DNA from: Iphione sp. A-MEVVRFRX5
Taxonomy: Eukaryota
DNA: 64,000 nucleotides
NCBI GenBank assembly: GCA_976226885.1
Contig: OZ320313.1
Coordinates: 155,992,001-156,056,000, forward strand
Direction of reading: 5' to 3'
Shown here: positions 8,676-60,774 of the stretch, piece after piece
Layout of the letters: each line of letters begins with the position of its first letter
Position numbering within the stretch: position 1 is the first letter of the stretch
Made by a program: the position numbers and the translations under genes
The notes under the pieces: model-generated
Seen by the model: only the letters and a program-made list of their open reading frames with translations
Told to the model about the DNA's origin: nothing
The model's database searches: none

Positions 8676-8856
8676 ACAATAGTTGCAGCATTATTCTTTG
8701 TACACTTGCTCAAGGTTTAACTATTGCTAGATGCTTAACTGTGCATTGCATGAAAGGTAAAAGATGAATCATTGTTACACTTTCGATATTCTCTTTAATT
8801 TATGCGAGGGAAACTCCAAACACCTCTTTCTTTCCAATATTCTTATCTAATAAATG

Positions 8857-9052
8857 CATGTTTAGCAAGACTTCCACAAATATTTGCAGCTCTTTCATAA
8901 ATTCAAGCATCTTTAGCCAAACTTCCAGGAATATCTGCCACTTTTCATGAATTAAACACATCTTTAGCACTACCTCTGTAAATATTTGCTCCTTTTTCAT
9001 AAATTAAATGCATTGTTAACATAGCCTCCTGAAATATTCTTTCTTTTCCATT
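8857..9052. repeat. Degenerate ~51-bp minisatellite, about 4 copies
   Basis: Units begin cat(g/c)tttagc...aaatat(t/c)tgc...ttttcat(a/g)aatt. A 17-aa periodicity is visible in ORF 8800-9000. Confidence 0.75.
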
Positions 9053-13824: not shown

Positions 13825-13897
13825 TCAAACGATATTGTCATTCACGCATTTGTTACCCTGGGGTTTATAATCACCGCAACATTCGGGTCCACATGGC
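13825..13897 (-). CDS. Astacin exon 15 (last coding): MPCGPECCGDYKPQGNKCVNDNIV-stop; not in ORF track
   Basis: Acceptor aacttttcag|, phase 2 matching exon 14. PC..CC..Y...G..CV resembles the tail after TSP1 in nematode-type astacins. TGA at 13825-13827. Confidence 0.82.
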
Positions 13898-16800
13898 CTG
13901 AAAAGTTAACAGATGCAAAACGTATAAGTAACACTTCTGTTCTATACTGAGAAGCTCAACAAACGAAATAAGGCCTAATAAAAAAAGTTCTGTGTTTCCG
14001 GTAACCTGACCAACCCCCATTTTGCTCCCAATGGAATTTTTTATTTTGTTTTCGTTTTGTGAATATCTCTGGAGTAAATAATGAGAGAAACATACACTAT
14101 ACACCAACTTGTTCTTTGGGTTACTAGCTTTCATTTGGTATAAGTTCCATTAACACCCAAGCACTGGTAATACTACATACAGTTGTTGGTTTAAAGCGCC
14201 GTTGACAGTGGAAAAAATATGATTTAAAAAAAAATGCCACCTGTCGACCTACCCTCTAATTTTCAGCCTGTTACCGGAAACAGAACATTTTTGCACTTAA
14301 GTATCCGCTATAGAACCGATGCATATAGGTCTATTCTAAGGCGCTGTTCACATACGTCCTGACATAAAATCTGTCCCCGGACACGGACATGGAGGATACC
14401 CCCAACAGAGATCATTGTTAAATGCTTCCTCATGGTCCCCACATGTATTTTACTATAGGCTCCTGTGGAATCCGCGTCCACGTCTGGAGAAAACCCATCC
14501 CAGATGGTTTGACATCTGCACCCATGTCCATGTCCGGAAATATCTGTATGTACGTGAATGCCTATAGTAGTAAAGGCAGGCTGGAAAAAATCTCTCTTCG
14601 TGTCTGGGTGCAGAACGGAAAAATCAGGATGTATGTGAAGAGGCCATAACAATAAATCTGTTTTGATAAAATGAGTACATAACTGTAGATATAATATCTT
14701 CTATATGCATGTAGGTTTCTTTTTGTCTGCATGTCACGAGATCCAGACAGTCAACATCCAAACAAAATTAAACAACCATCTAGTGCTTATGATCTACAGC
14801 ATGGATATGACCATAAATCAATAACTAAAGGTTATCTATTAATCATTTATCTATCTATCCATCTATGAATCTACTATACGGAACATTTATCTATCTAATA
14901 TATGGACTATCAACTTACATATAATATACACGAGCAATGTATCTCAGACACCATTCTTGACATTTTTTTTCGTTACACGGCGCTTCGCGAACTGCCAGCC
15001 TGCAAAATATTGACAGTTATGTATTTCTATGCAATTTATCAAAATGAAAACTGTTTAAATTCGAGTTTGTATTATCTGACGAATGACACCGTTCGTCGTC
15101 TACATTAATCTCTGGACGTCAGAAGTTATAATAAGAAAACTTTAAAACGCTTGTTAAAAAGGCTTGTAACTTTTGGCACAGTCTACGAGGATGTAAATAA
15201 AGGCTCAAGAAAGTTTACTTAGAAAAGTAAATCTGTCAAAAAAAAAACTCTACTCGGAGAATGAAGGTGCCCATAACTCACTCTTGTTGGTAACCGTCAG
15301 ACCTGGTGCAGACATAACGCCACCGCTCTCGACCACAGCCGCCGCAAGGTTTGGAACAGTTCGACACCTTCTCCCACATACAAGTTTGTCTTTGGTAGCG
15401 ACGGCCAGAGTTGCGCGAAGCGGGTTGCCCTCTTCCTGCAGCTGGTGCTGGGGTACGCCTTGTGGTTGTAGTCGTTGGTCTGGGTGTTGTCGTCGTGGTC
15501 GTTGTTCTTGGTGTTGTTCTGCGTGTCGTAGTTGTGGTTGGCCTGGGAGTTGTGGTTGTTGTAGTTGGTGGTGTCGTTGTTGTCCTTGTGGTTGCTCTTG
15601 TTGTTGTTGTTGTTGTTGTTGTTGGTGTTGTTGTTGTAGTAGTTCTTCGGGTGGTAGTTGTAGTTGGTCTGGTTGTTGTTATAGTCGTGGTGCGTAGGGT
15701 CGTGGATGGCCAGGTTGTGGCAATTTCTTGATTACGGCCAGATCCTGAGTTCTGACGGTTAATACCTCCACGGGCTATATTAATAGAATAACACGTAATA
15801 AAGATAAAGATAAACCTGGAATTGATGATATGGTGGTCGCGGCAGAATTTCCACCGTACATGGTTCTGAGCCTAGGATTACCAGTAAGTAAATTATAATG
15901 GAAAGGTTTCAGTGTTTTTGGTTTTAGTACATATAAAACGTTCGCTGTTACCATATAGTTAGATTCTATTGTTAAGGTTAAGGAATGCTTATAGTTCTGA
16001 TTTGGGACTGACCTAGCTGCTTGATCCGGTCCATGATGAGCAGAACGGCCGAGTGATTGAAGAGCTGCTCCTGCCTGAGCATGAAGACATTGTCAGACGC
16101 TCCGGTGAGCACCTCCATGGTGGCTCGGTTCACCCGCGGGCCAACCCCGATGGCGACGATGTGAATACCCGCTTCGCGAGCCTGCATGGCGCCCTGCACG
16201 ATGATGCCCTGAGGAAAATTCTGCGGGAAGTTGGAGTCGGTGACGATGACAGCGACGTCCGGCACATCGGCGCGGTTCCTCCGGGAGTCGCGCAGCATGT
16301 CGTGCTGTAGCAACCAGAGGGCTTTGTAAGGGTTGGCCTCGAAGGCCTGCAACAGCACCCCCTGGAGGGCGTCGCGGATGTTCTCGCTGGAGCGGGTAGC
16401 GCCAAGTTGGACGGTGACGTTAGCGTACTTGTTGTAGCTGATGATCCCCACCCGGTCTCGGTCGCTTGCCAGCTGGGCCCGCTCGATGAGCGCCTGGACG
16501 AACCAGGTGTAGCTGCTCCAAGGCTTGCGCTCACGTGAGCTCACGCTGCTGTCGAGCAGGACCACCAAGTCCATGCTATCCTCGTTGGAGCTGCGGTCCC
16601 TCGGTGGAGACGGTGGGGACGCTGTACACGGGGCAGGCCGAGGAGGGTGCGGGGTCGGCCTGGGGGAGGGCGTAGGAGGGTCGGGTCGAGAGGTGATCGG
16701 CTGCACCTGTCTACTGTCACAGTACGGACCGTAGTAACCGGAGCGACATTCACATACTTGCGTCACAGGAGAAGACTGCCAGCAAAATGCGCCGTTATGG

Positions 16801-19800
16801 CAAGGATTGGTTGGGCAGGCTTGTTTAACTGTAAAGAAAAAAAAAGGTGCAAAAAGCTCTGAAAGGAGCATGGGTATGGAGAAATAAATGGCATCACTAG
16901 ACAGACGTCTAATTAATGTTAGATAGATATGATCAGGAAAATATTCCTTTCAAATCTATTTTTACCACACGTTTTACTTCAGTATTTACCATACGTTCCA
17001 TCAAACCCGCGATCAATGTTCTTAATATCACCTGTAATCACTTGCATTTACTACAGAAACAGGCAAACTAGTGCAGTACTATTTTGATTTGATGACTTAT
17101 ATAAAAATGTAGATGAGAAGAGGGTCAAAGTAGGGAAAAGGTAACGTAAAATTCTTTATACAATGCAAACATACCAGCAGAATAATGAAACTTGAATCCT
17201 CGTCTGTTGTTGCGCAGACTTGTTCGTGCAGTTGACTTGAAAACGACAAGCATGTCGGCCCCATCCGACAGGAATGTTTCAGTGGGAGTGCTGCGACAGC
17301 ACAACCTGTCGAATAACAACATTTCGTATACAATGTAGTCTTGCATAGCACTAAGGGCGAGCAGGGGACGATTATAATGACCCACTTTCAAACTTAAACT
17401 ACAAAGACGTAGATAACCAGAAAATAGAAAAAAAAGTTTTTTTTTTCAGTCTGACAGGAAAAAACCTGCATTACACACCCATTAAATTTCGAGAACATGA
17501 TCGGGGAAGGAAATAACCGTAAACTATAGCGTGTATTTATCTGTTCAGGGCCCTGCCTAGACAGGCGAGCCATGGCATGGTTATTCTCATACCAAAGCTG
17601 ACATAAACCGAAACGGGTGACTCCACAAAGGGTGCGCCAAAGAAAGGCAGGAATTTGACTCGCGACACAGAGGGGCAGGTGTGCCCCCAGCAGGCTCACC
17701 TTGGGCCCGTCCTCCCCAGATCCCCGTTGTGGCGAACTTCGACCCAGTGGCGACATCTGTTGGAAAAGCAGTACAGTCCGAACTGTCCAGTGAACCAGAG
17801 TTTGACCCTGTATCCTTGCTGCGCCTGATGGGGGAGAGCCAGAGGTACATGGCATTAGTGATTAATTTTGCTAACGTGTTACCCTGAAAGGTATTCGTGA
17901 TGGCCGCTATCATGCATCTATCATTATTTATAGATCTACAATGAAAATGACTACCATTGTCAAGCCGCTGGGTAATTTACACTACGGCTTTGGAATGTGA
18001 GGCCCACTGTCCGAACCTTCACCTGACAAATACTAATGTGCCTCAGGCTACGTTATTGTATTTTTTTAAGTAGAGTTATCTATCTCGATGGAACACAATA
18101 GAAGACAGGGAAAAGACGTTCTACTATCTCTGCATTACCTGGTTATACAAATGCAGTAGAACTCAAGGAGGAAAGTGTTACATGGAAACTTAAGTACGCA
18201 TACTGTTTGTATACTGAAAAAAGGAACCAAGTGGCGAGATTCCCCTCAAACGTTATGATTTATCTTAATATAGGCACATAGGGGGTATTAACATAAATGT
18301 TATGTCTGAGATACAGGTGTGTTTGATTTAAAAACACCTCCATAGATCTAGAAGTGCACACAACATATGCACAGTGTAGACTTACAGTGATCTTCCAGCT
18401 GCATTCTGTGCCAATGTCATAGTATCCCCGGTTGTACTCTGGAGAACTAACCAGGCCAGGCGGTCCCTGACCTTCAGGCTGGGCTGTAAGGGCACCTCCA
18501 CAAACGTCTAAAAATGGATAAATTTACAGTGAATGAATTCAGATATCTACAGTATGTACAGTAAAAATACATTTTAAGCCAAATTATATGGGAGAAACAT
18601 ATAGTTACATTGTATTTCCAACCCTCCTATGAGAGCTCAGCTTTAGGCAGGGACCGAAACTGACCTATTCCGGGCCCGGTCTTATTATTCAAGGGATTCG
18701 ACTGTGCTTTTATCAAATTCTAAATATCCTCCATTATTGCAAATAGGAGCATTGAAACACATTTATATTACACTAATTCATAGTCTGAATGCGTGCAGAT
18801 GAATGATGTGATCTATGATACATGAATGAATACGTGGAGATATTGTCTTGTGCAGTTTACTATGCAGTGGGTCATGGAAGAACAACAAATATTGTCGGCA
18901 ACGTACTATTGACTACCACGTCCTCACAGAAACGACCTCCCAGACCATCTGGACATCTACAGCGACTGCAGTCCTTCGGGTCCTGATAACCCCTGTTCGC
19001 ACAGGACCTAGGCAAAGGTCTCGTCCGACATCGGCCTGTAATGTATACAATGAAGTGTGTTATTATGCATAGAGACACAATAAAGCCCCCCAAACTGAAC
19101 ATACTTGTTTTTCTTACTACACGCATGTTACGTATACGTCATAAATGTACATGAATGGATGGTCCACTTAATACTACACATACATAAAGAACACCGATGG
19201 AAGAAAACGGGACAAATGACATGCCAGACGTGGTTTCTTTCGGTTTTTCAAAGAGAAGCGATTTAAGACTTGTTCGTTATTCACAAAGCAATCAACATGA
19301 AATATTCCTCAAGGAAAACAATGCTTTGACATGAGACGCGCCAGAATTTTCTTGCTCAATTTTGTTAAAACGAAGTGTTATGTCAGATTCAGACAAAGGA
19401 AACATTGATAAATCTTGGCAGTGTTGTCGTCATTGAAAAAAAAACGAGATCTACTGGAGTATGTAAGGAGGGAATTAAAGAGTGCAAAGGTGGAAACCTA
19501 TAATCATAGCCATCCCATAATGCAATACCCGACTAAAAGCAAAGGGACAATTACTGTATAGGTGTAAAGGCAGCGGTGAACTAGGCCATGGTAAATTTGT
19601 ACAACGTCCTGGGACCTTGTGTAACTTGCTAATATCCCACAGTGTGATCAACTTTAAAGATAGTCCCTTCGCGTTCTTGTTCCTTATAATAGAGTCCGTT
19701 TGATCGTAGCGTAAAGACTACAGCCTTGAATTTTCACCTCTTAAATTGCAGATGGAGATACAAAGGTAACGGCCTAGAGGAGGTATTTTGTCGACGAGTT

Positions 19801-22800
19801 CCTTGCTCTGGTTAATTTGAGTCAGCCATACCGGTATTTTGTGACCGAAATAAGATGCATAAAGGAATATTAGAGCCAGTTCCTTCCTGATATGCTTTAA
19901 ACGCTCGTCACATCGACCGAAATTCCCTGTCTTTTGATACCAGGCTCAGACTTTACACAGTGAGTCATACGGCCTAAGAAAGTCTTCACACAGCTACAGA
20001 CACATGCGTGGGCAACTCTATGTCTAAAATAACAAAAATATGTCTAAAATAACAAAAGTATATCTATTTTGATTCTAGTGTACTGTTATGCTTGGACATA
20101 TTTATTGTACGGATGGACTAGCATATTCCATTTTACTCTCTGTTTCTTAGAATTTAAATCTAGCCATTTCGACACTCCAGGAATATCTGGGGCGTATTGT
20201 ACGTGTCATCCAGGAGACTATATATAGTGTTTTCATTGCAGCACGTCATCCAATCTATACGTCGCCTTTTACACCTGTGCCATAGTCCTTAAACAGTGCT
20301 CTGTACTATGCCCAGTTTCTACATCGCCCCCAAAGCCACTCTTAAAAACACATGGTCATTTAATAAAACATTCAGCGTCCGTTTTAAGCAGCTGCGGGTT
20401 TAGAAAACTGTATAGACTTCAATGAGTATAATATGTATTCCTAAGATCGGCTCCGGCTCTCCTTCACCTTAATTAATATGGTGAATATATTATGGAAATA
20501 CCCGTAGAGTTAATTATGGTGATGTATATCATTCAGCTGTTTCATTCACCAAAACGCCAGGCCTCAATACTTTTTGCCCACTTACTTTAGTAGTTTCCTT
20601 GTCATTAGCACTTCTTTGGTGTGAAGTGCACTAGTTTTTAGAGAAATTAATTTGGGAAAATATAAATCACTATCAATGAGATAAGAAACAATACTCATTA
20701 TAGTTGGGAAAAATCAAGAGCTCATATACACTCACTAGTACAGTAAGCTAGATTGATGATCTTCATATCAGCAAATGAAAGTTCCACTCTCTGTCCAATC
20801 GTGCGCTGGTAGCGAGAATCTGCGGTCTCTACTGTGGGACGACCATTAACGGAGAAGGCCTGCAAAGAAGGAGACACTCATGTAATATATGCATCCATTT
20901 TTCTTGCATACTAATTTAGATTTATTTGCCTTGAGAGAACCTCTGTTCATCCTGTAGTTCAAAGGCATTGGTCAAATTGGTTTAGGTATGATTGCGTGCC
21001 TATGTGTAATCATATTTCTATGTGTGACCAGGGTTTTTTCATATTACATGTGACGCCATTTAAACAGGTCAGCTATTTTATAGTAAGGTATTATAACAAT
21101 TCATTTTCAATATTTCAATCCCTTTTAGGTTACAGATGTATAGGAGGCTTTCACGCTGCGGATAGAAGCTAGAGACGTTCACGTTGCGGATACAAGCTAG
21201 ACTTTGCAACCAACCCTCTAGTAGTGCGATCCATCCATAATACGAACACTTTTGAAAAGAACAAATACAGATCTGCTACACCGTAACATGTTCAATAACT
21301 TTAAAAAATCCCTTCATGTCATATTACCGCATGTCTGACGCATAAAATATGTGTATTCTTTTAGTTCGGAAATGCACTGATAGATTCAAAATCCGCTTCC
21401 TCATCATCTCATAGTACACGATTTTCTATCAACTCACCTGACACACAGAGCGTTTGCTAAAAAATACGTATAAAAAGACCACAGAAACTTTAACTGATCT
21501 AAAATCCGAACGTCATACCGGTAAATGTTGCGGAAGCCTGACAGGAATACGAACTCATCTATGATCGACATACCAACCCAAAAGAATATTCTACTATATT
21601 CTGAGTTGTTTTTTCCATGTTTTTTCCCAACAGCCACGTCTGACACATATGTAGATAGGCCAAAAAGCTACACAGTAATGATGATTCAATTTTTTTGCCA
21701 GATATACATCACAAAACTACGAGGAAGGATAAAGAATTGAACCAATCCGACAAGTAATTGTTTGACATCAAATTGACTCATATTTAGAATGCCTTTCTAA
21801 ACAGACCTTCAAACTTTCACCCTCCAAACTCAAACAACCATATTCACTATTTAGAACTGTCATTTCATGCGGACATAGTGTAGTTGATGACCTGGTCGAA
21901 ATGGTGATAAAAATGTATCTGTATCCAGTTAATGCACTGCTCGATAGAAAATCCTGATATGCCTTCCATTCTTCCCTCTTTCAACAATCAGTACATAAAG
22001 TACAAAATGTGATCAAGGTCACTAGGCCACTGTACCTGGAGATACAGCGTATAGAAATTCTGACGACGAATTACTACTTAAACGACTATTAGAGCTTAAT
22101 AACCTTTAATAGACTATAAAAATCTATTAAGTGTTGTATTCGCACAGTAGAAGGTTGACGCTTCATGGCAATGACATCATAAAGAATCGTAAAGAAAACG
22201 TCAGAATCCTGATATTGTCATCGCTTAACATGAGGTCATACGGAGTTTCTAGTAGCTGACAAATATTTATAACCCCAGTCTAATTATCACATGCACTATT
22301 CTAATTAGCCTCGACTGTATATTGGAGAGTAAAAATTGACGTACCAAAGGAAAGGTAATACATCTACGTGCAAACCAGGTAGTTTCTTTTGTTCGCTTTA
22401 TGGAAATAGAACAAACGCGAGAGGAATGGGCGTTGTTTTCCAGTGAAAAGCTAATAAGTTTCTTTGTACCTAGGGCCTGAAGGAAACTCTTCTGAAGAAA
22501 GTCCCTTTGTCCACTGGCCTCTTTGATCGCCGACAACACTCGTGCCCCGGTCGGTTATCTGGAGTTGCCCTCCCACTCGTCTTCAACATTCATAAAATCA
22601 ACAGACATCCCAGGCGCTTTCAGCGATCCAGTCTCGACCACACCATAAATCACGCCCCACCATTGATGGCAGACGAAATCCGCTTAGGATTTAAGAAAAC
22701 GCCTTTAGATGGCTCTCTACCAATCCACAGGGCACCGGGGTAAAGGTCATAGGGAGCAGGGGTCACAGCAATAAAGAGATCGGAGACCCACTAAATAGGA

Positions 22801-25800
22801 TACGAATGCCTAGCCGTGACAGGAGAGAGAGGAAGCTGTTGTACATGAAAGAAAAGAAACGATTATCTGCTTGGAAAGGAGTTGTTCGTACCTTCCTTGC
22901 GGCTCTGGTAATTATGAGATGAAGTAAATGATAAGGATTCTTTACGTTCTCGAGACGAATAAAAACATTAAGGCGGTTTCTACTACGAGACTAATGACAT
23001 ATGCCGCTTACTACCAAAGCGCCAGGCAATTAAGATAATATAAATTTAGGTTCGATGAAGCGAGAAGATAAGGTTGAAGGAACTAAATACATATATACAA
23101 AATATACAAGTATATATACAGTGTATATATGCATGAACTTATATATACATGTATATTTCAACCCAAAGGACATAAGAAAAACGTGATGTTTGGATTATAC
23201 ACAAGTACCTCAGTTGATGCCTTTGAACCGGGTAACCAGCACCTCACTCTACCTTTTAACTAATCAGTCGTCCCAGTTAGGTGGTCTTTCCATGTACACC
23301 TATTCACGACGCTTCCAGATATGTAGGCACTATGTCTGCTGCCAGATGAGGCTGTTTGACATCCAGGTAAGCCCGTAATACCTACTGATGTGGAAACCTA
23401 TTATGTTCACACACCTGTATGCAGGAAAACCTAGTGACAGTGTCTTTCTCTGGCTTGTCCTGCACGTTGTGCCTATATATCTAAATGCATGGATACATGT
23501 ACATGGAGAGACTACCTTATTAGAATGTCGGTTGCAATGGCTGGCCGTTTTAATGGCTGACAACCCTAACCACTACAGGACATATTGACTGATCACCCTG
23601 GCCATTTAAACACTGCCATTTCTTACTTCGGCCATATTGACTGGCATTGCCTTATTAACGGGTGTGTGGTTAAAAAGATGCATTAAAGGTATACAACATA
23701 CTTTCATGTTCAGTGTATCACGGTATCATTCATGAGGAAATCCCGAATCTTAACATGCTGACTTTTAAAGATATTAATGGAATTTTACCCCCAAATTGGC
23801 AGAACCAGAAGTTATAACATGATGCATGAGATTTCAGTTACGTCCTTGTAAAAGGTAAATTGTGTTTCGGAAATACATAACACTCGACACTGATTGTAAT
23901 GCATGCATACCCAATGTTAACAGACAATGCCATAAGTCGTGGATATGACGTATGCTCTGTCAAGATGAGAAATCTATAGCCATAATTACCAACGCCCATA
24001 GATAAACTTTCCCCATAAATTACGCATTTGTATGCATGATACGTGCACATATCAGACCGATTTCCCAGAAAGACATGTTTATGGGCGTGTTAAAAGGCAT
24101 CCAAAGACGTTACCTGCGGGCACAAACCACGGACAGATACCTTCGCAGTACCTTAGACCTCCTCGACAAATTATAAACTTTGAAACAAGCTGACGTCACT
24201 AATGAGAGAGCAACTCCCAAAATGAAGACTGAAGTGCAAAGACCCCTTTGTGCTGTCAGCTGATAAAACCAGAACTATATCACGAGTTTTAAGTTACACG
24301 AAAACATAACACTTGTCAAATATTGATCAGTTGATGGCTGAATTAAAAATCATATAGATGATTAAAACCCATGCAGATGACCAGTAGCATCAACAAACCA
24401 GGACATCGCAGGTGATATATAGTCTCGTTTCCATGATGGCACGATATAACATATCTAAGATTTGTACAACCTTCTGTGACAGTGAATTTCCATTGGATAA
24501 TAAGGGCAATAAGGTCAGAAGGGAAACGTCTCATGGTTTCCCCCAACAGTTCATATGTTAAAGAACTTCGGGTGATGCACATTCTTCTCATGACGCTTGA
24601 CTGTATCTCGATATCATAGAACTTTGTGCTCTGTTGGATATTGCCAGTGTACATGTTTCTAATCAGAAATAGGACAGAGAGGGGCGAGGATGAGAAGAGA
24701 GTCTTCGGATGGGCAAGAATTTTGATCCCTGCCTTTTTGACTTAAAAGTACTGATATCTTCCTGTTTATTACATATAGAGAATAATATCATATAGCCATG
24801 TCTCCTTTATATTACTTAGCCTTAAAGTTAAAATACAGGTCAGGGAACCCTCAGTGAATTCACTTTGATCAGAACATTTCAGCTCCCAACAGAAGTTACC
24901 TCTATAATAACTAGCATACAAACCTGCCATTACAAATGTCAGGAACCCTATGATAGACCCCATTCCGATCATTCTGTGGGCTACAAGATTTCTAGCTAGG
25001 TGACCTTAATTAGGGTAAAGTGATGAAATATTTTTAATGCTCGGTATTTTTTGATAACAGGTAAACACAAATCCTTAATGTAAACATTCTTAATGCCAAA
25101 TAAATGCACAGCCATCTCTCTTTCTTCCTAAACGTATGAGGTAAATGTACACATAATTATATCACTGTACCTCAAGCGGTCAACATTGCATTCAGATTCA
25201 TTCAGGTTTCGTTGATGACCTCACCTGGTGAGGTTATGCTGTATTCCATTTATATAATTGCAAGACCATTCTAAAATAATAAATCACCAGTTGTTATACA
25301 TCTCTACCTTTCATGATACAGTCAACGACCGTTTGGTTGGCTTATCATATGGCTAATTGAGCTAATTATATCTCATCAAGCAACCTGCATTGAAGGTAGA
25401 TATACATAAAGATGCTGCGAAAACACACCTTATTGAAACTATACATGCATCAGGGGTATGTCCTCCCCACCGACCCCACCCCAAGGGTCCTTGACATAAT
25501 ATGTCTAAGACCCTAATCTGATTCCTTTGCTGTAATCTTGAAATGACGTTTATAACAATCGTAAAATGTTGTTGTAGCATGTGAAAAAAAAAATAACTCA
25601 ATCTGAGCAGATTAAGCTTTACCTTACCATGGCACGGTAATGCATGACCGAGCCAAGGTCGTACGGTACGTTCTTGTCCTCTATGAACTTCGCGAGTACC
25701 ATGGCGAAATTTCCTTCAGCTCCTGGTGAAATGTTTTCACTCCTGATCGAGATGTATTCATCCCTATCGATCCTCTGATGCTCGTGGAACAAGCCCAGAG

Positions 25801-28800
25801 AATGGCCAATCTCATGGGCGATGTACCCGGCCTGTTTGGGGAACAATATCACATACCATGCAGTCGAGGAAATCCTAAGCGGATCGTGCGATCTTATGAA
25901 GTATGTGTATGGACCAATGTTCTGTACCGTAAACATTTGAAACGCCATATTTACACTGTGCGTGCTTTCAGCGTATTGCGACGTGGAAAAGCAGGTTATG
26001 TCCCATAAACTGGCATTATGTTTAGATGTTGAAGTATACAAGTTATTAACAATCATCTTAAACTTAATCAACTGGAGCACGTGTTTTTATTACTTTAGCA
26101 ATAAAATGTAAATCACTACTAATTCTGAGCGAGACAAACCATACGTACAGAAGAAAAACAGGTGTAGGAGAGGTAGATGGGTTGAGGCACAATCGAAGAT
26201 CTACCAATAAATGAATAACATCTGAAATGAAAATCACATAACAGTTAGGCATTTTATTAAAGAACCGGTTCTTTGTCATGTTAACTGCTGAGAACTGGTT
26301 AGTTTCTTCCTACGATATCATTATTCGTAAATTATCCGAAAACAATGCCATAATAATACCATAGACTTAGTAAGGTCCACAATGATTTACAAATAATACT
26401 AAATCTATTCATCAGAATTCTTCGTCGCTGCAAATATAAGGCCTGTTATCCAGGAAACCATATCCAGGTCCAGAAATGCAGAACACTCCATGACAGTCTG
26501 TAAGGCGTGGAACGGGCTTTCTGGAATGCATCCTGGGTTTATGGGAAATGGGCCTGATAAAGCTGTATGGACTGGCAATTTGCCGTGAAGTCAATGATGT
26601 AGGGACATGGGACGTACCCCCATCCTGGAACTTTAGAGAAGAGTATGTGAGGGTTGGTAAGACGGCGATTCACGCCCACCTGGACGAACTCTAAACACGT
26701 GCCCTGCGTCCACATGTCTATGGCAGATTTGATCAAACGCGACTCGTGCTCACCTGAAAAAAAAACATGGGTAAGAATAAACTTTCACAAATGGAAATAA
26801 CGTTTCCTATTCAGAGTAATAGAGTTATGTTCAATCAAGATAAGCCTGAATGGCTTACATGGATAGCACAGGGATTTTCATATTTTCTGGTTATTTATAT
26901 ATATATATTTGATTTATTTTACAAAACATTTTCCAGACGAACTGCGCCCCTCCCATAATAACCAGTCTAGATTATAGGTCTAACTACTGGAACTGGTCTA
27001 AATATTGGAACTACCTCTAGCAATAAGTGTACATGTAGTTGGCAATTGTTGAAGATATTTCTGTGCGTAAAAGGCAGTTTGTAACATTTTTCTTATTCAT
27101 CCCTTCAAACATCTATCAGTAGATCTCAAAAACATTGCCTCTTTTACCGGAGAACGCTTTTAACTTTGTTTTATCACAGTTTTAGAAGAAGAGCCTTTTC
27201 TCCAAAGTGGCTCGTGAATACCGACACTTTGCCGCAGGGCCACTTCTGAATTTCTACACAAATGTTTAGGGGGGACTTACGCAGAGAGCCGTCAACCTTG
27301 TAGTAGATCTTGGTGTCCCACTTGGTGACCGGGAAGTCGGAGAAGCGGCGGATCTTGCGCTTGACTCGCCGTCGACTGCCGGTGGGACAGGTGTTGTTGA
27401 GCTGCTCACTGAGTGAGAGGATCTGGTTATCTTCTAGTATTTGGTCTTCTTCGATACAGCTCCAGTGATCGGTTGATGGTAGAGTTAACTGAAGTGTTTT
27501 ATGGGTATGCATTGTTAAATCATCAGCATAGTCTGCCCTGTCGACTACAATGTTAAAAATTGGTTTAATTTGGTAAAGTATCAGTATACAAACATTCTGT
27601 CAAGTCATCTACCGTGCGAGGTGGGCACAACGTAATGAACTACGCACTTTCAAGCTAACTATGATGCCTAAAGGGTATAACTTGATAAAGCATATACATA
27701 ATATGTTGAGTCAGCTGCAGGGGCATATATTGATGTGACCTAATAATGCTTTGACTCTATCTGTCAACACCCGAGTGGTTTTCTCTCACACGTACTTCAG
27801 ATCCGCCTTCCCCTTTATCCTGCAGACACACGTACTTCAGATCCGCCTTCCCCTTATCCTGCAGACCTGGTTTCCATGTTACTGTTGCATTTGCATTGTG
27901 TTGTGTTATTTTTAGCAGCAAGGGATAAACAATATTAGTGTTTTCTTATGTAGATTGCATTGGTGCATTGCATGTGCACTTTGTGAATGCCCGACTCTGG
28001 GTTATCCTTTATTGGTCCATGCCCAAAATTTCACACAATGCAAATGCAAATGCACGAGTTGCATATAGCAGATAGCATTTGTAGGAGGCAATAATATCAT
28101 TGAATCTATGTTAGATGAGTAAAAGAACGTGTGATTACCACACATTTCTACACATTGTCATCAGATTTGCCAGTTTTGGGATAGTTCTACATCAAATACT
28201 CCAGTTTTAGAGCGTTTCATGTTTTCACAGGTTTTAGAATGATTTTACATCAAAATTTGCCAGTTTTCGGATTTCTTTAAATCAAATTCACCAGTTCAAA
28301 CTTTTTTCCTTATTATTACATAATTTAACACAGGTTCATACACACTCTTATCTTTAACAATGCACTCGTGGTACACGTCCAAATGCAAACCAAAAGGAAT
28401 CCCTGTGCATGAGTATGCATGAACCGGCTGTAATCAGATTATCTCGATGCAATGTACTTGCTCGCTCGCACATGTTCATACATGTACAAGCAAGTATGGA
28501 ACCGAGGCGTTACCCTGTTACACTTGGTTATGCTCACCTCCACTTGTCTGACAGTGCGCCTTGCGTTGATGCACCTGGCGGCAGCCTGCCTCAGCATCTC
28601 GCAGCGTTTCTTGCGAGTTTCACAAGGTTGACAGGATTGACACTCCCTCCACTGCTCCACTGAACAGTTGTACATACTTTGTTCTTCTGCTGTGCTGTTT
28701 GCACTCAACATCATGCGGGGAGACCACACTATTCGTCTTTCTAGCAGGCCCTGTTTAAGAAAATGAACAGTCCAGTTGAGCTGTCAGCATTTGTTAAAGT

Positions 28801-40800: not shown

Positions 40801-43305
40801 GGACTGGCAGTGCTAACCTCTACCTGTGCGGCGGCTCTCATTCTCACCTCACAGCAGCCACCACACATGTCAGATGGGCCCAAAGGACGGGACGTTCCCA
40901 TGGAGGATACCTGAGGTCCAGGTCCCGGTCAATGCTGCCCGCGGCCTCCGAGTGGCTTCAAAGTAAATGAATGTCAATGCAATATGGAAATATACATACT
41001 CTGAATAGATTCTGGAACTCCCTCGCCTTATGCCGTGTGTATCTGGAGTTCCGGGAGAGATATATGAGAGATATATCCGTGTAAACATCAGGCTGTGCAC
41101 AATACCCTGTTGCATGCACATGTATATGGCCCGGAGCCGGATATGTTTACAGAGAGAGTCTATTAGATACACGGCATCTTTTGTGTCTTCATAGATACTG
41201 TTCCAACAACAGCGCCCAAAACGTCGAGGTTAATAGGTACTGCAGGGAATTAGTCTTTCCGAGTTTCCGAGTGCAACATGGACCCTAGTATAGCGCGAGG
41301 AGTGGCCAGCCAAGGATTGGAGGGTCGGGGCAATTAAAAGGGGCCGCATCCTGGACGCTTTGACCTTCATCGGTCAGAGTTCAGGGAGATCTGTCACCCA
41401 CAGGTATAGAACACTAGCCAGCACTGGGCGCAGTGGCCACTCCTCCTTCCCAATGAAAGGGACAGGCCACTTCATGCGATGCACTAACTCACCTATGCTT
41501 CGTTTTTATACCAATATGTGCATGGGTATGTTTGCGTGTCTGTCTATATGAATGGTCTGACGTGTATGTAAGATTGGATGTGGTCATGTACCTGTGAACG
41601 GTGAACCAAAGACTTACGTCGCGATAGATATCGTGCTACCTTGCTACGTTGCAGGAAGTTCAACTCATTGGTGCACCTCTGCGATCTTCTAAAGACCGTT
41701 TAGTGTAGCAGTCCTGGAACCCCTACGTACCTCATCAGCATCGTGGTCTCTTCTCTTCTCCACTCCCCCTCTCTATCTCCCTCTCCCCTGTCTGTCTGTC
41801 TGTCTGTCTGTCGGTCGGTCGGCCGGTTCCTGTATACCCTGTGTCCACCAATGTATTTGCTTTACCCAGTTCTAATAACAGGTAACCTTCCTCAAAGTTG
41901 GCCTCTCGAGTGGGAAATGACAATAGAGGCGTGTCAACGTTTGTTGTCTGGTCAACGATAAAGCAGGGGTGGTAAGACCGGGGAGGGTGGAGGAAGGGCA
42001 TCGAGCACAGGACGTGACAATCGCCAATGGTCTGTTTTGGACAGTAAGCATTGCTATTGTTGAGTGATAGGGCAGTATTTCCACTGCAGCCGGCCCTCTC
42101 AAAGGACCACTCAGCGCAGACCTACCGCCACTTGCAATCCGCTCAGCCGTCATTGTGCGTGTCTTGACCTTTGACCCACGTTTGAGTGAGTCTGACTCCC
42201 TTCTCTCTTTTGTATTCGACCCACCTCCTTTTCCTCCGACTTCCACCGTCTGCTCCCCAACGCCTTGCACCTACCTCCCACCAACCACCACCACCCCCAC
42301 TTCCATTTTCTTTTACTGCGGGATTTCTTGCCAGAAGACTCCGTCAGACTTCCTTGGGGCGCCGCCGACAGACTACTTTAAAAAGCCAGCCAGAAAAGAG
42401 GCCACGCTATGTTGAATCTTTACATAAAACCTGACTCGGCCCCCAACCACGGCCGCCTCCTTCTTCCCCCCATTGGCCTATAAGTGGTTTGGTTCTATCG
42501 CTTGTGGGGGGAGGAGAAGGGAAGGGGGGGCAGGAATATGGTCTGACTGTGGATACATACATGCGGTTGGAACAGAATCAGACGAGTTAAGGAGGTAGAA
42601 AAAGTGGGCATTTTCATTCCTGTGGTTTATATGACAACGGGCTCCACGTGGCCAGATCACGCGGACGAATATAAAAAGATAATATTGTTGTGTATACTTG
42701 ATTGCCTATCGATTGAAAGCATTCGGTGTTGGAACTACTTGACGGTTTTCTGACCAGGTGTGACCAACGACGCGTCTCATAAAAAAAACAGACCTGAAAG
42801 GTCCTATATGCATATATGTACATGTAAATTTATAGCTTGTATGGAGTGTAGGCCTTGGCAACTGAACTATTGTTGCAGCAATTTATACATTCCCTCAGAG
42901 ACAGTATGTATGTGATCAGCGCCGTGTGAAGCAGACTTGGCTAGGGATAGTACTTGTCTCAGTTGATAAAGTGTCTGAAAACGACCAGGTCGATGAAAGC
43001 TTCTTCTCTTTCTCTTAAATATATAACTTTAAGGAAACTTTTCACCTACTCTCCAGACTACACTGTAATGGGATGCGGGTAATTGACCCCGGGGTGATGA
43101 ATCACTTACCTTACAGGCAACAATCACAAGGAATAGGAGCCTTTGATGCGAGGCTATCTATAGACTCCCAGACACACCCTCATTAACTAAGTCTCGCTGC
43201 ACTTCCTAAGTCACAATAAGGAAAAGAGAGAAAACTTACCTGGACAAGGAGAGAGGAGGAATAGATCCACAGAAGGATGTACGCTGAGTAACTCCGATCC
43301 AACAT
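13825..43305 (-). CDS. Multi-exon astacin-family (M12A) zinc metalloprotease, BP10/SpAN- or nematode-astacin-like: SP-pro-astacin-EGF-CUB-EGF-VWA-Thr-rich-TSP1-CC tail; 15 coding exons, about 997 aa
   Basis: Exons 43240-43305, 28538-28750, 27281-27488, 26618-26753, 26149-26221, 25628-25831, 20736-20859, 18907-19035, 18386-18507, 17700-17824, 17175-17305, 16013-16828, 15282-15774, 14919-14999, 13825-13897. All introns are GT-AG with matching phases; the sum is 2994 nt (998 codons including stop). Zinc motif HEIGHSLGLFH, Met-turn SVMHY and furin site RRRVKR are present. Confidence 0.88.
14919..14999 (-). CDS. Astacin exon 14: TSP1 C-terminal part (ELAVREAPCNEKKCQEWCLRYIARVYY); not in ORF track
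   Basis: E..CN...C TSP1 ending. Acceptor aatattttgcag|, donor AT|GTAAGT, 81 nt, phase 2-2. Confidence 0.85.
15282..15774 (-). CDS. Astacin exon 13: Thr/Arg/Pro-rich mucin-like stalk + TSP1 N-terminal part (CMWEKVSNCSKPCGGCGRERWRYVC); not in ORF track
   Basis: Open minus-strand frame rich in ACN codons. Acceptor aatatag|, donor GA|GTGAGT, 493 nt, phase 1-2. The plus-strand poly-Val and poly-Cys ORFs are its antisense shadow. Confidence 0.92.
16013..16828 (-). CDS. Astacin exon 12: second EGF + Pro-rich linker + complete VWA domain
   Basis: CPTNPCHNGAFC...CECRSGYYGPYCD, then DLVVLLDSSVS ... RVGIISY ... AVIVTD ... GIHIVAIGVG. Acceptor ttttctttacag|, donor G|GTCAGT, 816 nt, phase 1-1. Confidence 0.93.
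17175..17305 (-). CDS. Astacin exon 11: CUB C-terminal part (LCCRSTPTETFLSDGADMLVVFKS...RGFKFHYSA)
   Basis: S.G..M.V.F.S......GF...Y CUB signature. Donor G|GTATGT, 131 nt, phase 2-1. Confidence 0.95.
17700..17824 (-). CDS. Astacin exon 10: CUB middle (AQQGYRVKLWFTGQFGLYCFSNRCRHWVEVRHNGDLGRTGPR)
   Basis: Frame not shown in the ORF track. Acceptor ctctcccccatcag|, donor AG|GTGAGC, 125 nt, phase 0-2. Confidence 0.93.
18386..18507 (-). CDS. Astacin exon 9: CUB N-terminal part (CGGALTA...VSSPEYNRGYYDIGTECSWKIT)
   Basis: CGG...SP.Y...Y....C.W.I CUB signature. Acceptor ccatttttag|, donor ACT|GTAAGT, phase 1-0. Confidence 0.95.
18907..19035 (-). CDS. Astacin exon 8: EGF-like (SCANRGYQDPKDCSRCRCPDGLGGRFCE)
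   Basis: C.N.GY.DP..CS.C.CP.GLGG..CE pattern typical of BP10/NAS astacins. 129 nt, phase 1-1. Confidence 0.96.
20020..20061. repeat. 20-bp tandem duplication
   Basis: atgtctaaaataacaaaa(a/g)t twice. Confidence 0.9.
20736..20859 (-). CDS. Astacin exon 7: end of catalytic domain (AFSVNGRPTV...IGQRVELSFADMKIINLAYCT); not in ORF track
   Basis: Canonical AFS.NG.PT...IGQR..LSF.D...IN..YC. Acceptor cttctttgcag|, donor A|GTGAGT, 124 nt, phase 0-1. Confidence 0.96.
25628..25831 (-). CDS. Astacin exon 6: zinc-binding HEIGHSLGLFHEHQRIDRD and Met-turn YDLGSVMHY
   Basis: Extended HExxHxxGxxH motif with catalytic Glu intact. Acceptor ccccaaacag|, donor ATG|GTAAGG, 204 nt, phase 0-0. Confidence 0.97.
26149..26221 (-). 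CDS. Astacin exon 5 (GCYSFIGRSSIVPQPIYLSYTCFSS); not in ORF track
   Basis: Matches the astacin GCWSYVG...Q.I.L...C motif. Acceptor attttcatttcag|, donor TCT|GTACGT, 73 nt, phase 2-0. Confidence 0.92.
26618..26753 (-). CDS. Astacin exon 4 (LIKSAIDMWTQGTCLEFVQ...PHILFSKVPGWG)
   Basis: Typical astacin 'AI..W...TC.F' segment. Acceptor tttttttcag|, donor GG|GTACGT, phase 1-2. Confidence 0.92.
27281..27488 (-). CDS. Astacin exon 3: end of propeptide, furin site RRRVKR, start of mature domain (KWDTKIYY)
   Basis: Acceptor cacttcag|, donor C|GTAAGT, 208 nt, phase 0-1. Confidence 0.9.
27787..27865. repeat. Near-perfect 40/39-bp tandem duplication
   Basis: cacacgtacttcagatccgccttcccctttatcctgcaga twice, differing by one T. 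Confidence 0.95.
28160..28300. repeat. Degenerate ~32-bp minisatellite
   Basis: Recurrent catca(g/a)attt gccagtttt units. Confidence 0.6.
28538..28750 (-). CDS. Astacin exon 2: Cys-rich propeptide (GLLERRIVWSPRMML...CINARRTVRQVE)
   Basis: Acceptor ttttcttaaacag|, donor GAG|GTGAGC, 213 nt open, phase 0-0, six Cys. Assignment rests on phase and position. Confidence 0.75.
37761..37818. repeat. ~32-bp tandem duplication
   Basis: ctgaggagaggtaac(a/cc)agcaactaa twice. Confidence 0.85.
38631..38827 (+). mobile_element. Possible short solo LTR
   Basis: Begins TGT, ends TTAAC, flanked by an identical 5-mer CATAC (38626-30, 38828-32). Internal TATA-like ctataagt at 38705. Confidence 0.35.
41788..41822. 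repeat. (TCTG)n/(TCGG)n microsatellite
   Basis: Direct read. Confidence 0.9.
41830..42200 (-). mobile_element. Decayed non-LTR retrotransposon (LINE) APE endonuclease fragment in astacin intron 1
   Basis: Frameshifted pieces LTQTW (about LTETW), VEILPYHSTIAMLTVQNRPLAIVTSCARCPSS (about E.L...PL.IV.VYRPPSS) and HPCFIVDQTTNVD (about C.I.GDFNVD), in the expected order. Confidence 0.4.
43240..43305 (-). CDS. Astacin coding exon 1: signal peptide MLDRSYSAYILLWIYSSSLLVQ
   Basis: ATG with A at -3, a 22-codon hydrophobic stretch, and donor CAG|GTAAGT at phase 0. It joins phase-0 exon 2 to give ...LLVQ|GLL, a plausible cleavage site. The link spans a 14.5-kb intron and is inferred. Confidence 0.72.
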
Positions 43306-54103: not shown

Positions 54104-54130
54104 CTGTCTGTCTGTCCGTCTGTCTGTCTG

Positions 54131-54177
<47 letters not shown>
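54104..54177. repeat. (TCTG)n followed by (TC)n microsatellite
   Basis: Direct read. Confidence 0.95.

Positions 54178-60706: not shown

Positions 60707-60708
<2 letters not shown>

Positions 60709-60774
<66 letters not shown>

What the first reader, a model, noticed from the sequence alone, without database searches (positions are those of the whole stretch)
13825..43305. Secreted astacin protease carrying a VWA domain: astacin-EGF-CUB-EGF-VWA-mucin-TSP1
Seen: 15 phase-consistent exons give a catalytically intact astacin (HEIGHSLGLFH, SVMHY) followed by EGF, CUB, EGF, a full VWA fold, a Thr-rich stalk and TSP1. Known: astacin-EGF-CUB-TSP1 is the nematode astacin layout (DPY-31/NAS-36 type), and astacin-EGF-CUB-Thr-rich-CUB is sea-urchin BP10/SpAN; I do not recall a VWA module as standard in either. 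Inference: a protease tethered to collagen or other matrix through VWA/TSP1 on an extended glycosylated stalk, for example for cuticle, shell, tube, egg-envelope or mucus remodelling. This is the best candidate for an undescribed system in the window.
Basis: partly seen in the sequence, partly recalled or inferred. Interest (0 to 1): 0.75.

Follow-up and report, generated by a model that had tools for sequence, protein, structure and literature searches.

The report
Astacin protease gene with VWA domain
The window holds a real 15-exon invertebrate gene for a secreted zinc protease of the astacin family that also carries a von Willebrand A domain; the layout is kept in at least two other distant species and I found it in no named protein, but it is a new mix of familiar modules, not a new kind of system.

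Summary
Confirmed. On the minus strand, 43305-13825, fifteen GT-AG exons form one open frame of 997 codons. The order is: hydrophobic N-terminus, Cys-rich pro-region, furin site, intact astacin (HEIGHSLGLFHEHQRIDRD, SVMHY), EGF-like, CUB, EGF, Pro-rich linker, VWA, Thr-rich stalk, TSR-like segment, Cys-rich tail.

Two raw public contigs from other organisms (L001, L002) carry exons 2-14 (L002 also 15) in the same order and phases, mostly with identical lengths. Synonymous sites are saturated and non-synonymous differences are about 0.2, so the gene is under purifying selection.

EGF and VWA share one phase 1-1 exon, 346 nt downstream of the last CUB exon. The VWA therefore almost certainly belongs to the protease gene. 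Its fold is confident, but its metal site (MIDAS) is degenerate. TSP1 is only weakly supported, and exon 1 is unconfirmed.

No named protein in a 1.84-billion-protein library has a close relative of this VWA, and none of the 150 best hits has an astacin zinc motif. The organism is unknown but not vertebrate-like (CpG o/e 0.68).

The layout is the nematode NAS subgroup V layout plus an EGF-VWA-mucin insert. Matrix tethering is plausible but untested. This is a new variant of a known kind, of moderate interest.

The parts
43240..43305 (-). Exon 1 (candidate): ATG plus a 22-aa hydrophobic N-terminus (signal peptide or signal anchor), donor CAG|GTAAGT, phase 0
   Evidence: Sequence. It is the only candidate with a consensus donor in the 17 kb upstream of exon 2. 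It is not confirmed in L001 or L004.
28538..28750 (-). Exon 2: N-terminal pro-region with a conserved six-Cys module
   Evidence: Conserved in L001 and L002 (57% and 41% identity, six invariant Cys). No Pfam family. The AF2 model is unusable (pLDDT 57).
27281..27488 (-). Exon 3: pro-region (C-I-E-E-D-Q-I-L, candidate aspartate switch), basic cleavage site RRRVKRKIRR, start of the astacin domain (FPVTKWDTKIYYKVDG)
   Evidence: Sequence. Conserved in L001 and L002.
26618..26753 (-). Exon 4: astacin, N-terminal subdomain
   Evidence: Pfam Astacin positions 17-43, weak on this piece alone. Identical length of 136 nt in all three loci.
26149..26221 (-). Exon 5: astacin (CYSFIGRSSIVPQPIYLSYTC)
   Evidence: 67-69% identical in the tblastx blocks against L001 and L002; 73 nt in all three loci.
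25628..25831 (-). Exon 6: astacin zinc site HEIGHSLGLFHEHQRIDRD and Met-turn SVMHY
   Evidence: Pfam Astacin 87.2 bits, E 1.4e-24. Best PDB matches are BMP1 at 5e-15, then ZHE1, TLL1, meprins and astacin. 77-85% identical in the tblastx blocks against L001 and L002.
20736..20859 (-). Exon 7: C-terminal end of the astacin domain
   Evidence: Pfam Astacin positions 146-189 of 189, 35.6 bits.
18907..19035 (-). Exon 8: EGF-like module after the catalytic domain (phase 1-1)
   Evidence: Six-Cys pattern. Weak EGF-type Pfam hits in the orthologues. 129 nt in all three loci.
17175..18507 (-). Exons 9-11 (18507-18386, 17824-17700, 17305-17175): CUB domain, together a phase 1-1 module
   Evidence: Pfam CUB 17.2 bits on exon 9. 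CUB was hit by 3 of the 12 exon pieces scanned from the three species. The CUB consensus (CGG..SP.Y..C.W.I / GY.V.L.F / GF.F.Y) is readable in the peptides.
16013..16828 (-). Exon 12 (phase 1-1, 816 nt): EGF (16826-16707), Pro-rich linker (16706-16578), VWA (16577-16014)
   Evidence: Pfam VWA 71.6 bits and EGF 20.4 bits. AF2 pLDDT 85.1 and pTM 0.73. Foldseek target-normalised TM 0.82-0.85 to collagen VI alpha3 N5, VWF A3 and integrin alpha1 I. 58% and 45% identical in L001 and L002.
15282..15774 (-). Exon 13: Thr-rich mucin-like stalk (15718-15443; 92 aa, 66% Thr) and the first part of a TSR-like module (15391-15284)
   Evidence: Composition. Tandem repeat of period 27. TSP1_spondin E 0.035. 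CS.PCGGCG...RY.C is invariant in the three loci.
14919..14999 (-). Exon 14: end of the TSR-like module (PCNEKKC) and conserved QEWCLRYIARVYY; phase-2 donor AT|GTAAGT
   Evidence: 70-76% identical in the tblastx blocks against L001 and L002; 81 nt in all three loci.
13825..13897 (-). Exon 15: Cys-rich tail PCGPECCGDYKPQGNKCVNDNIV and stop codon
   Evidence: Conserved in L002. The acceptor and stop were read.

Best explanation
One gene encodes a secreted, multi-domain astacin zymogen.

Shown:
- The exon model is a single open frame with GT-AG introns.
- The catalytic site is intact.
- The VWA fold is confident.
- Gene structure is conserved and the gene is under purifying selection in three deeply diverged species.
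- EGF plus VWA occupies a single symmetric phase 1-1 exon, wedged between the CUB exons and the mucin/TSR exon.

Inferred mechanism:
- The N-terminal hydrophobic segment takes the protein into the secretory pathway.
- The pro-region keeps it latent, probably through the conserved acidic C-[IL]-E-x-D motif acting as an aspartate switch.
- A furin-type convertase cuts at R-x-K-R (RRRVKR|KIRR).
- The zinc site (three His of HExxHxxGxxH plus the Tyr of SVMHY) then cleaves extracellular matrix or envelope proteins.
- EGF-like and CUB modules help select the substrate, as in BMP1/tolloid and nematode DPY-31, NAS-36 and NAS-37.
- The VWA domain, the TSR-like module and the Cys-rich tail hold the enzyme on matrix. 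They are separated by a stiff O-glycosylated Thr-rich spacer.
- VWA binding is probably metal-independent, because the MIDAS is degenerate.

Evolution (inferred): the layout is astacin-EGF-CUB-TSP1 with an EGF-linker-VWA cassette inserted by exon shuffling into a phase-1 intron.
For: - Exon model: one ORF, all introns GT-AG.
- Same exon order, phases and lengths in L001 and L002.
- pS 0.82-0.91 against pN 0.20-0.23 over 987 nt. DNA similarity between the loci is confined to exons.
- Pfam Astacin, VWA, EGF and partial CUB.
- The catalytic exon is closest to BMP1, TLL1 and ZHE1 in PDB.
- VWA model pLDDT 85; best folds are collagen-binding A domains.
- Introns flanking exon 12 are 346 and 238 nt.
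- A Branchiostoma protein carries a collinear EGF-linker-VWA segment, 28% identical, E 3e-25.
- Nematode subgroup V astacins with EGF, CUB and TSP1 act on eggshell, cuticle and procollagen (PMC2824743, PMC11304992).
Against: - There is no transcript evidence for any junction.
- Exon 1 is 14.5 kb upstream and is not confirmed in the relatives. The entry into the secretory pathway therefore rests on this candidate and on the extracellular nature of every domain.
- TSP1 is sub-threshold.
- MIDAS is incomplete: Thr to Ala in all members, and the second Ser is His in L001 and L002. A classical metal-dependent ligand site is not conserved.
- Substrate, tissue and organism are unknown.
- CUB and astacin could only be scored in pieces, because the spliced protein was not searched.
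Confidence: 0.7

Rival explanations
1. There are two adjacent genes: an astacin-EGF-CUB protease, and a separate EGF-VWA-mucin-TSR matrix protein. The reader's model joins them wrongly.
For: No RNA evidence was available. In the window an ATG lies 14 codons upstream of the exon-12 acceptor, in frame (ORF 15978-16871).
Against: - The gap between exon 11 and exon 12 is only 346, 211 and 245 nt in the three species. It has a polypyrimidine tract and an AG, with phase 1 on both sides.
- The upstream ATG is not conserved. L001's ORF starts at a GTG inside the acceptor.
- The in-frame translation upstream of the EGF is the polypyrimidine tract, not a signal peptide.
- Exon 11 has no stop codon before its donor.
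Confidence: 0.06
2. The EGF-VWA exon is an optional cassette. Because it is phase 1-1, skipping it keeps the frame and gives a nematode-like astacin-EGF-CUB-mucin-TSR isoform. The VWA form would then be one of two products.
For: Exon 12 enters and leaves in phase 1, and exon 13 also enters in phase 1. The same holds in L001 and L002.
Against: There are no data on splicing. Strong conservation of exon 12 (58% and 45% identity) shows that it is used, but not how often.
Confidence: 0.2
3. The VWA domain is not a matrix anchor. It is a protein-protein module for oligomer assembly or for capturing the substrate (an exosite), as VWA domains are in matrilins and collagen VI.
For: The MIDAS is degenerate. 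The best sequence match in PDB is collagen VI alpha3, and the only named hit of the word search was a matrilin; both families use VWA domains for assembly (my knowledge).
Against: Nothing speaks against it directly. The fold matches do not discriminate between the roles.
Confidence: 0.25
4. It is a decaying or catalytically dead copy (pseudogene or pseudoprotease).
For: None was found.
Against: - There are no stops or frameshifts in 997 codons.
- All zinc ligands, the general-base Glu and the Met-turn Tyr are kept in three species.
- pN is far below pS.
Confidence: 0.03

Closest known systems
Nematode astacins of subgroup V (HCH-1/NAS-34, DPY-31/NAS-35, NAS-36, NAS-37, NAS-38)
   Same: The order is pre-pro, astacin, EGF, CUB, TSP1 (PMC2824743). 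They are secreted matrix-processing enzymes acting on eggshell, in moulting and at the procollagen C-terminus (PMC2824743, PMC11304992).
   Different: They have no EGF-VWA cassette, Thr-rich stalk, Cys-rich pro-module or C-terminal Cys tail. Orthology was not tested, because no phylogeny was possible with exon pieces. The TSP1 here is only weakly supported.
BMP1 / tolloid-like proteinases
   Same: They are the closest solved catalytic domains to exon 6 (E 5e-15). They have furin-activated pro-forms, and CUB and EGF modules that direct substrate choice. They act as procollagen C-proteinases (PMC11304992).
   Different: Tolloids have several CUB domains and calcium-binding EGFs, and no VWA, mucin or TSR. 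The window gene has a single CUB.
Sea-urchin SpAN and BP10
   Same: They are astacin-family proteases of an invertebrate deuterostome (PMC13319035). From memory, their layout is astacin-EGF-CUB-Thr-rich-CUB, so they share the Thr-rich spacer after a CUB.
   Different: They have no VWA or TSR. The layout is recalled and was not checked here. Their known substrate is Chordin (PMC13319035).
Ascidian Tast proteases (astacin with thrombospondin type 1 repeats)
   Same: An astacin domain is combined with TSP1 repeats, and they act on an egg coat (PMC9265791).
   Different: Tasts are type II membrane proteins without a signal peptide and have no EGF, CUB or VWA (PMC9265791).
VWA domains of mussel PTMP1, collagen VI alpha3, integrin alpha1 I domain and VWF A3
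   Same: They are the best structural matches to the modelled VWA (E 1e-14 to 1e-12; TM 0.82-0.85 normalised to the single-domain targets). All bind collagen or assemble collagenous matrix.
   Different: Sequence identity is 14-21%. The MIDAS is incomplete here, which resembles the metal-independent VWF A domains (my knowledge) more than integrin I domains.
Branchiostoma EGF-linker-VWA segments (XP_078687161.1, XP_078589338.1)
   Same: They have a collinear EGF, Pro/Thr linker and VWA, 27-30% identical over the whole exon. They share TD(S/A)NF after strand beta4.
   Different: They are very large multi-domain proteins with no astacin zinc motif.

Membership tests
Astacin (MEROPS M12A, Pfam PF01400) | Extended zinc motif HExxHxxGxxHExxRxDRD | tested here: met
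   HEIGHSLGLFHEHQRIDRD in exon 6. The motif is also kept in L001 and, with two conservative changes, in L002.
Astacin (MEROPS M12A, Pfam PF01400) | Met-turn SxMHY with the zinc-ligand Tyr | tested here: met
   SVMHY in the window; SAMHY in L001 and L002.
Astacin (MEROPS M12A, Pfam PF01400) | Profile match above the curated cut-off | tested here: met
   87.2 bits on exon 6 and 35.6 bits on exon 7, against a cut-off of 22.5.
Astacin (MEROPS M12A, Pfam PF01400) | Zymogen with an inhibitory pro-peptide (aspartate switch) and an activation site | tested here: inconclusive
   A basic site RRRVKRKIRR lies before the mature N-terminus, and a conserved C-[IL]-E-x-D motif is present. The role of the Asp is inferred.
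Astacin (MEROPS M12A, Pfam PF01400) | Proteolytic activity | not testable with these tools
   This needs recombinant enzyme.
Nematode-type astacin-EGF-CUB-TSP1 (NAS subgroup V) | Domain order astacin, EGF, CUB, TSP1 with nothing else | tested here: not met
   The order is kept, but EGF, VWA and a Thr-rich stalk sit between CUB and the TSR-like module, and a Cys-rich tail follows.
Nematode-type astacin-EGF-CUB-TSP1 (NAS subgroup V) | Catalytic domain groups with subgroups III-V in a tree | not tested
   No nematode sequences were available through the tools. The catalytic domain is split over five exons and was not joined.
VWA (PF00092) | Profile match above the cut-off and alpha/beta Rossmann-like fold | tested here: met
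   71.6 bits against a cut-off of 23.8. pLDDT 85.1 with alternating strands and helices. Target-normalised TM 0.82-0.85 to solved single A domains.
VWA (PF00092) | Complete MIDAS (DxSxS ... T ... D) | tested here: not met
   Window DSSVS, L001 DRSIH, L002 DRSSH, P0049 DTADQ. The Thr column is Ala (ANPY) in all four. The Asp of TD is kept.
CUB (PF00431) | Profile match over the about 110-aa domain with four conserved Cys | tested here: inconclusive
   17.2 bits against a cut-off of 21.4 on exon 9 alone. Three of 12 exon pieces hit CUB. The domain spans three exons that were not joined, but the consensus residues are readable.
TSP1 / TSR (PF00090, PF19028) | WxxW ... CSxxCGxG ... RxR ... C layered fold with a profile match | tested here: inconclusive
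   Only TSP1_spondin at E 0.035 and 14.8 bits, against a cut-off of 41, in the window piece. There was no hit at E<=1 and no TSR in the PDB profile search. There is one Trp instead of two or three, and an extra Cys (CGGCG). The domain is split between exons 13 and 14.
BMP1/tolloid subfamily | Several CUB domains interleaved with calcium-binding EGF | tested here: not met
   There is one CUB and two plain EGF-like modules.
Mucin-like O-glycosylated spacer | Long Ser/Thr/Pro-rich repetitive stretch | tested here: met
   92 aa, 80% S+T+P and 66% Thr. Period-27 repeat. Also Thr-rich in L001 and L002. Glycosylation itself is not testable.

The most novel reading that the evidence does not exclude
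This is the founding member of a lineage-restricted, anciently conserved astacin subfamily. It would be defined by an EGF-VWA cassette shuffled in as one phase 1-1 exon, together with a novel six-Cys pro-region module and a novel C-terminal Cys-rich tail. It would be the first astacin shown to carry a VWA domain, and so a matrix-docked processing protease in an animal group whose genomes are not yet annotated.
Probability: 0.45. Interest if true: 0.5.

Novelty: new variant of a known kind. Interest (0 to 1): 0.4.

Why it matters
Astacins such as BMP1/tolloid, DPY-31, hatching enzymes and ovastacin decide when extracellular matrices and egg coats are built or opened. Their non-catalytic modules set where they act.

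A VWA domain on an astacin would add a docking module otherwise typical of collagens, matrilins and integrins. The single symmetric exon gives a clean textbook case of exon shuffling into an older astacin-EGF-CUB-TSP1 frame.

The gene is also a marker for a group of organisms that is present in raw public assemblies but missing from annotated proteomes. It does not open a long-standing question, because the parts and the logic are familiar.

Tried and rejected
- Word search with the EGF-VWA stretch: only one raw-contig ORF and a matrilin.
- Word search with the neighbour ORF to name the organism: two unnamed ENA ORFs. The contig L003 has no astacin gene within 10 kb.
- Word search with the exon-6 stretch: ten short unnamed astacin ORFs at 43-57% identity. 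The two contigs I fetched (L005, L006) are other astacins without VWA.
- Cluster look-ups gave no names for any close relative.
- JGI metagenome scan: nothing.
- Rfam and tRNA scans of the window: nothing.
- Pfam on 20 open stretches in introns and flanks: nothing credible.
- Search for the counterpart of exon 1 in 1.2 kb (L001) and 11.6 kb (L004) upstream of exon 2: none convincing.
- AF2 of the six-Cys pro-module from three sequences: pLDDT 57, not used.
- Profile of the TSR-like piece against PDB: only a chance FGF21 hit.
- tblastx found no synteny outside the gene between the window and L001 to L004.
- There are no paralogous exons elsewhere in the window.
- Literature searches for astacin with VWA found no such architecture.
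- Rejected: a vertebrate or human origin (CpG o/e 0.68), and the reading of ATG|TAA at 14921-14916 as the stop codon. It is a conserved phase-2 donor, and exon 15 is conserved in L002.

Full report
**What is there.** The window has no N runs. The feature lies on the minus strand. Pfam, run piece by piece and by reference, gives these scores:
- Astacin: 87.2 bits (E 1.4e-24) on 25622-26086, 35.6 bits on 20725-20877, and a weak hit on 26542-26784.
- CUB: 17.2 bits on 18263-18523.
- VWA: 71.6 bits (E 1.3e-19), together with EGF at 20.4 bits, inside one uninterrupted 323-codon stretch, 15981-16949.

**Exon model.** I fixed the splice sites by eye from the sequence and from a related contig. A script then checked them.
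- There are fifteen exons, every acceptor is AG and every donor is GT, and all phases are compatible.
- The total is 2994 nt, giving 997 codons and a stop at 13827-13825.
- Exons, high to low coordinate:
  1. 43305-43240
  2. 28750-28538
  3. 27488-27281
  4. 26753-26618
  5. 26221-26149
  6. 25831-25628
  7. 20859-20736
  8. 19035-18907
  9. 18507-18386
  10. 17824-17700
  11. 17305-17175
  12. 16828-16013
  13. 15774-15282
  14. 14999-14919
  15. 13897-13825
- Introns are 238-1700 nt, except intron 1 (14489 nt) and intron 6 (4768 nt).
- The exons were concatenated only inside that script, to count frame and stops.

The spliced protein was not handed to any search or fold tool. All searches were done exon by exon, by reference. 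Domains split across exons (astacin, CUB, TSR) could therefore be scored only in fragments.

**Read-out of the product.**
- MLDRSYSAYILLWIYSSSLLVQ, a hydrophobic N-terminus.
- A pro-region with six conserved Cys.
- An acidic CIEEDQIL motif.
- The basic site RRRVKRKIRR.
- An astacin domain with HEIGHSLGLFHEHQRIDRD and SVMHY.
- An EGF-like module.
- A CUB domain.
- An EGF.
- A 43-aa linker that is 37% Pro.
- The VWA domain.
- A 92-aa stretch that is 66% Thr, with a 27-nt repeat.
- A TSR-like segment, CMWEKVSNCSKPCGGCGRERWRYVC ... PCNEKKC.
- A tail, QEWCLRYIARVYY-M-PCGPECCGDYKPQGNKCVNDNIV.

**Is it more than chance, and is it one gene?** The word search with the EGF-VWA stretch found a single close relative, P0001, an ORF on a 10.4-kb Logan contig (L001, run ERR14368249). 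The exhaustive search of 1.84 billion representatives added P0115, on a 140-kb ENA contig (L002/L004, ERZ26222911), and a more distant fragment, P0049.
- Both contigs are collinear with the window. Exons 2-14 are present in L001, which ends there, and exons 2-15 in L002.
- Order and phases are the same. Lengths are identical for exons 4, 5, 6, 7, 8, 10, 11 and 14 (136, 73, 204, 124, 129, 125, 131 and 81 nt). All sites are AG/GT.
- Over 987 aligned nucleotides of the equal-length exons, pS is 0.82-0.91 (saturated) and pN is 0.20-0.23. Amino-acid identity is 67-70% for all three pairs.
- Nucleotide similarity is confined to exons.
- This is an old gene under purifying selection in three lineages that are about equally distant from each other.

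**The exon 11 to exon 12 junction.** It cannot be answered with RNA here, but the genomic evidence points to joining.
- EGF and VWA are in one exon.
- That exon lies 346 nt (window), 211 nt (L001) and 245 nt (L002) downstream of the last CUB exon, behind a polypyrimidine tract and an AG.
- Exon 11 leaves in phase 1 and exon 12 enters in phase 1, in all three species.
- There is no conserved start codon or signal sequence in front of exon 12.

**Weak points of the observation.**
- TSP1. Pfam gave nothing at E<=1 on the 58-aa exon piece. It gave one sub-threshold hit, in register, on a 36-aa piece (TSP1_spondin, E 0.035, 14.8 bits against a cut-off of 41). A three-species profile found no TSR in PDB. 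The conserved pattern C-x-W ... CS-x-P-CGG-C-G ... R-Y-x-C ... C-N-x3-C resembles a TSR with a single Trp and an extra Cys. I call it TSR-like.
- Exon 1. It is the only ATG-initiated hydrophobic mini-exon with a consensus phase-0 donor in the 17 kb upstream of exon 2. I found no counterpart in 1.2 kb of L001 or in 11.6 kb of L004. Some upstream exon must exist, because exon 2 has a conserved acceptor and conserved coding sequence upstream of its first Met. Which exon it is remains unproven.

**The VWA domain.** AlphaFold2, on exon 12 with 27 aligned VWA segments, gives pLDDT 85.1 and pTM 0.73, with the expected alternation of strands and helices. The EGF is also well modelled and the linker is disordered.
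- Foldseek places the model next to mussel PTMP1, collagen VI alpha3 N5 and N2, CMG2, integrin alpha1 I and VWF A3 (E about 1e-14 to 1e-12; TM 0.82-0.85 normalised to the single-domain targets).
- Sequence search of PDB gives collagen VI alpha3, integrin alpha1 I, PTMP1 and VWF A1.
- The metal site is not conserved. DxSxS reads DSSVS in the window, DRSIH in L001, DRSSH in L002 and DTADQ in P0049.
- The MIDAS Thr column is Ala (ANPY) in all four, and only the Asp of TD is kept.
- A conserved integrin-like, metal-dependent ligand site is therefore unlikely. A metal-independent surface, as in VWF A domains (my knowledge), remains possible.

**The protease.** Exon 6 is closest to BMP1 (5e-15), zebrafish hatching enzyme ZHE1 (3lqb), TLL1, the meprins and crayfish astacin. 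All zinc ligands, the catalytic Glu, the Glu of HEHxR and the Met-turn Tyr are present in all three species. The basic site before the mature N-terminus is conserved as R-[VS]-K-R-K-I-R-[RT], which fits activation by a furin-type convertase (inference).

**How it most likely works.**
- Shown: an intact astacin zymogen gene with EGF, CUB, EGF and VWA, a Thr-rich spacer and Cys-rich C-terminal modules, conserved across deep divergence.
- Inferred: the product is secreted, kept latent by the pro-region, and activated by a convertase. CUB and EGF modules help select the substrate, as in tolloids and nematode subgroup V enzymes. The VWA, the TSR-like module and the tail dock the enzyme on matrix, with the glycosylated stalk as a spacer.
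- The nematode enzymes with the core layout digest eggshell (HCH-1), release old cuticle (NAS-36, NAS-37) and process a cuticle procollagen (DPY-31) (PMC2824743, PMC11304992). A matrix or envelope substrate is the best guess here too.
- Exon 12 is a symmetric 1-1 exon. Exon 8, and exons 9-11 taken together, are also 1-1 modules.
- A Branchiostoma protein has a collinear EGF-linker-VWA segment (28% identity, E 3e-25).
- Insertion of a ready-made cassette by exon shuffling is therefore the simplest origin. Skipping exon 12 would keep the frame, so an isoform without VWA is possible (rival 2).

**Comparison with what is known.**
- The layout is the nematode subgroup V layout (astacin, EGF, CUB, TSP1; PMC2824743) with EGF, VWA and mucin inserted, and with extra Cys-rich modules at both ends.
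- It fails strict membership of subgroup V, and also of the tolloids, because it has one CUB.
- Ascidian Tasts combine astacin with TSP1 repeats but are type II membrane proteins (PMC9265791).
- Cnidarian surveys list astacin-TSR proteins and, separately, VWA-TSR proteins (PMC5446238).
- Sea-urchin SpAN and BP10 are astacin proteases that cleave Chordin (PMC13319035). Their Thr-rich layout is from memory.
- Full-text searches found no paper describing an astacin with a VWA domain.

**Novelty test and its limits.**
- In the exhaustive search, 1402 proteins matched the exon at E<=1e-3.
- The 150 best are almost all large multi-VWA proteins. Named examples come from Branchiostoma, Haliotis and Batillaria. 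None contains HExxHxxGxxHE.
- The only matches above 30% identity that cover the VWA domain itself are the three raw-contig ORFs; the few other rows at 33-38% are multi-VWA or EGF-repeat proteins.
- The library includes recent NCBI models (XP_078... accessions). So no annotated proteome in that library holds an orthologue.
- Only 150 hits are visible, however. An astacin with a distantly related single VWA would rank lower, and the Pfam-architecture query could not be run.
- I therefore rate the architecture as probably undescribed, not as proven absent.

**Organism.** It is unknown. No search returned a named close relative. GC is 0.42 and CpG observed/expected is 0.68 over the window. That is far from vertebrate values, so I do not take the contig for human or vertebrate. 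The relatives come from long-read style assemblies of environmental or host-associated samples. From memory, names of the form ctgN_NNx_l are metaMDBG contigs, and here they carry eukaryote-like gene density.

**Verdict.** This is a new variant of a known kind, of moderate interest (0.4).

Noticed in passing
window 28538-28750 (-), exon 2: A conserved six-Cys module in the pro-region (Y-x-C ... W ... C-x2-C-x2-C ... C ... C-I), invariant in three species. It has no Pfam family, and long Cys-rich astacin pro-peptides are unusual. AF2 from three sequences was unusable (pLDDT 57).
   Followed up: partly
window 13825-14999 (-), exons 14-15: A conserved C-terminal tail after the TSR-like part (QEWCL[RM]YIARVYY, then PCGPECC..YKP.G..C). 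It has no family match. The apparent stop ATG|TAA at the end of exon 14 is a conserved phase-2 donor.
   Followed up: partly
window 16013-16828 (-), exon 12: It is a symmetric phase 1-1 exon. Skipping it would keep the frame and give an astacin-EGF-CUB-mucin-TSR product. Exon 8, and exons 9-11 together, are also 1-1 modules.
   Followed up: no
window 4012-5430 (-): A 473-codon open stretch downstream of the protease gene. It is Ser/Arg-rich and has no Pfam family. Two unnamed ENA ORFs are 40% and 35% identical. Only the N- and C-terminal blocks are conserved in L003 (55% and 70%). It is probably a large exon of an uncharacterised gene.
   Followed up: partly
window 43300-44700: A GC-rich stretch (GC 0.57, CpG o/e 0.70) just upstream of candidate exon 1, with long open stretches in several frames and no family match. 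It may be promoter or 5' UTR, or low-complexity sequence.
   Followed up: partly
window 60695-60780; 54089-54177; 8851-9038; 27787-27866: Simple and tandem repeats: (AG)43, (TCTC)22, a 51-nt unit repeated 3.7 times, and a 40-nt unit repeated twice inside intron 2.
   Followed up: no
L003 (ENA ERZ25767047, ctg38955_39x_rc, 2.6 Mb): The contig name ends in 'rc', which I recall as the assembler's mark for a rescued circular contig. Yet the 21 kb I read has sparse ORFs, GC 0.38 and a homologue of the window's neighbour gene. It looks eukaryotic, so the circular flag is probably an artefact.
   Followed up: no
L006:268-1287 (+) and L006:3224-3792 (+): An unrelated metagenome scaffold carries a C2H2 zinc-finger-like ORF. 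Next to it is a compact astacin gene in which the counterparts of exons 6 and 7 lie only 27 nt apart in one called ORF, followed by an EGF-like module. It is a different astacin, without VWA in the 6 kb available.
   Followed up: partly
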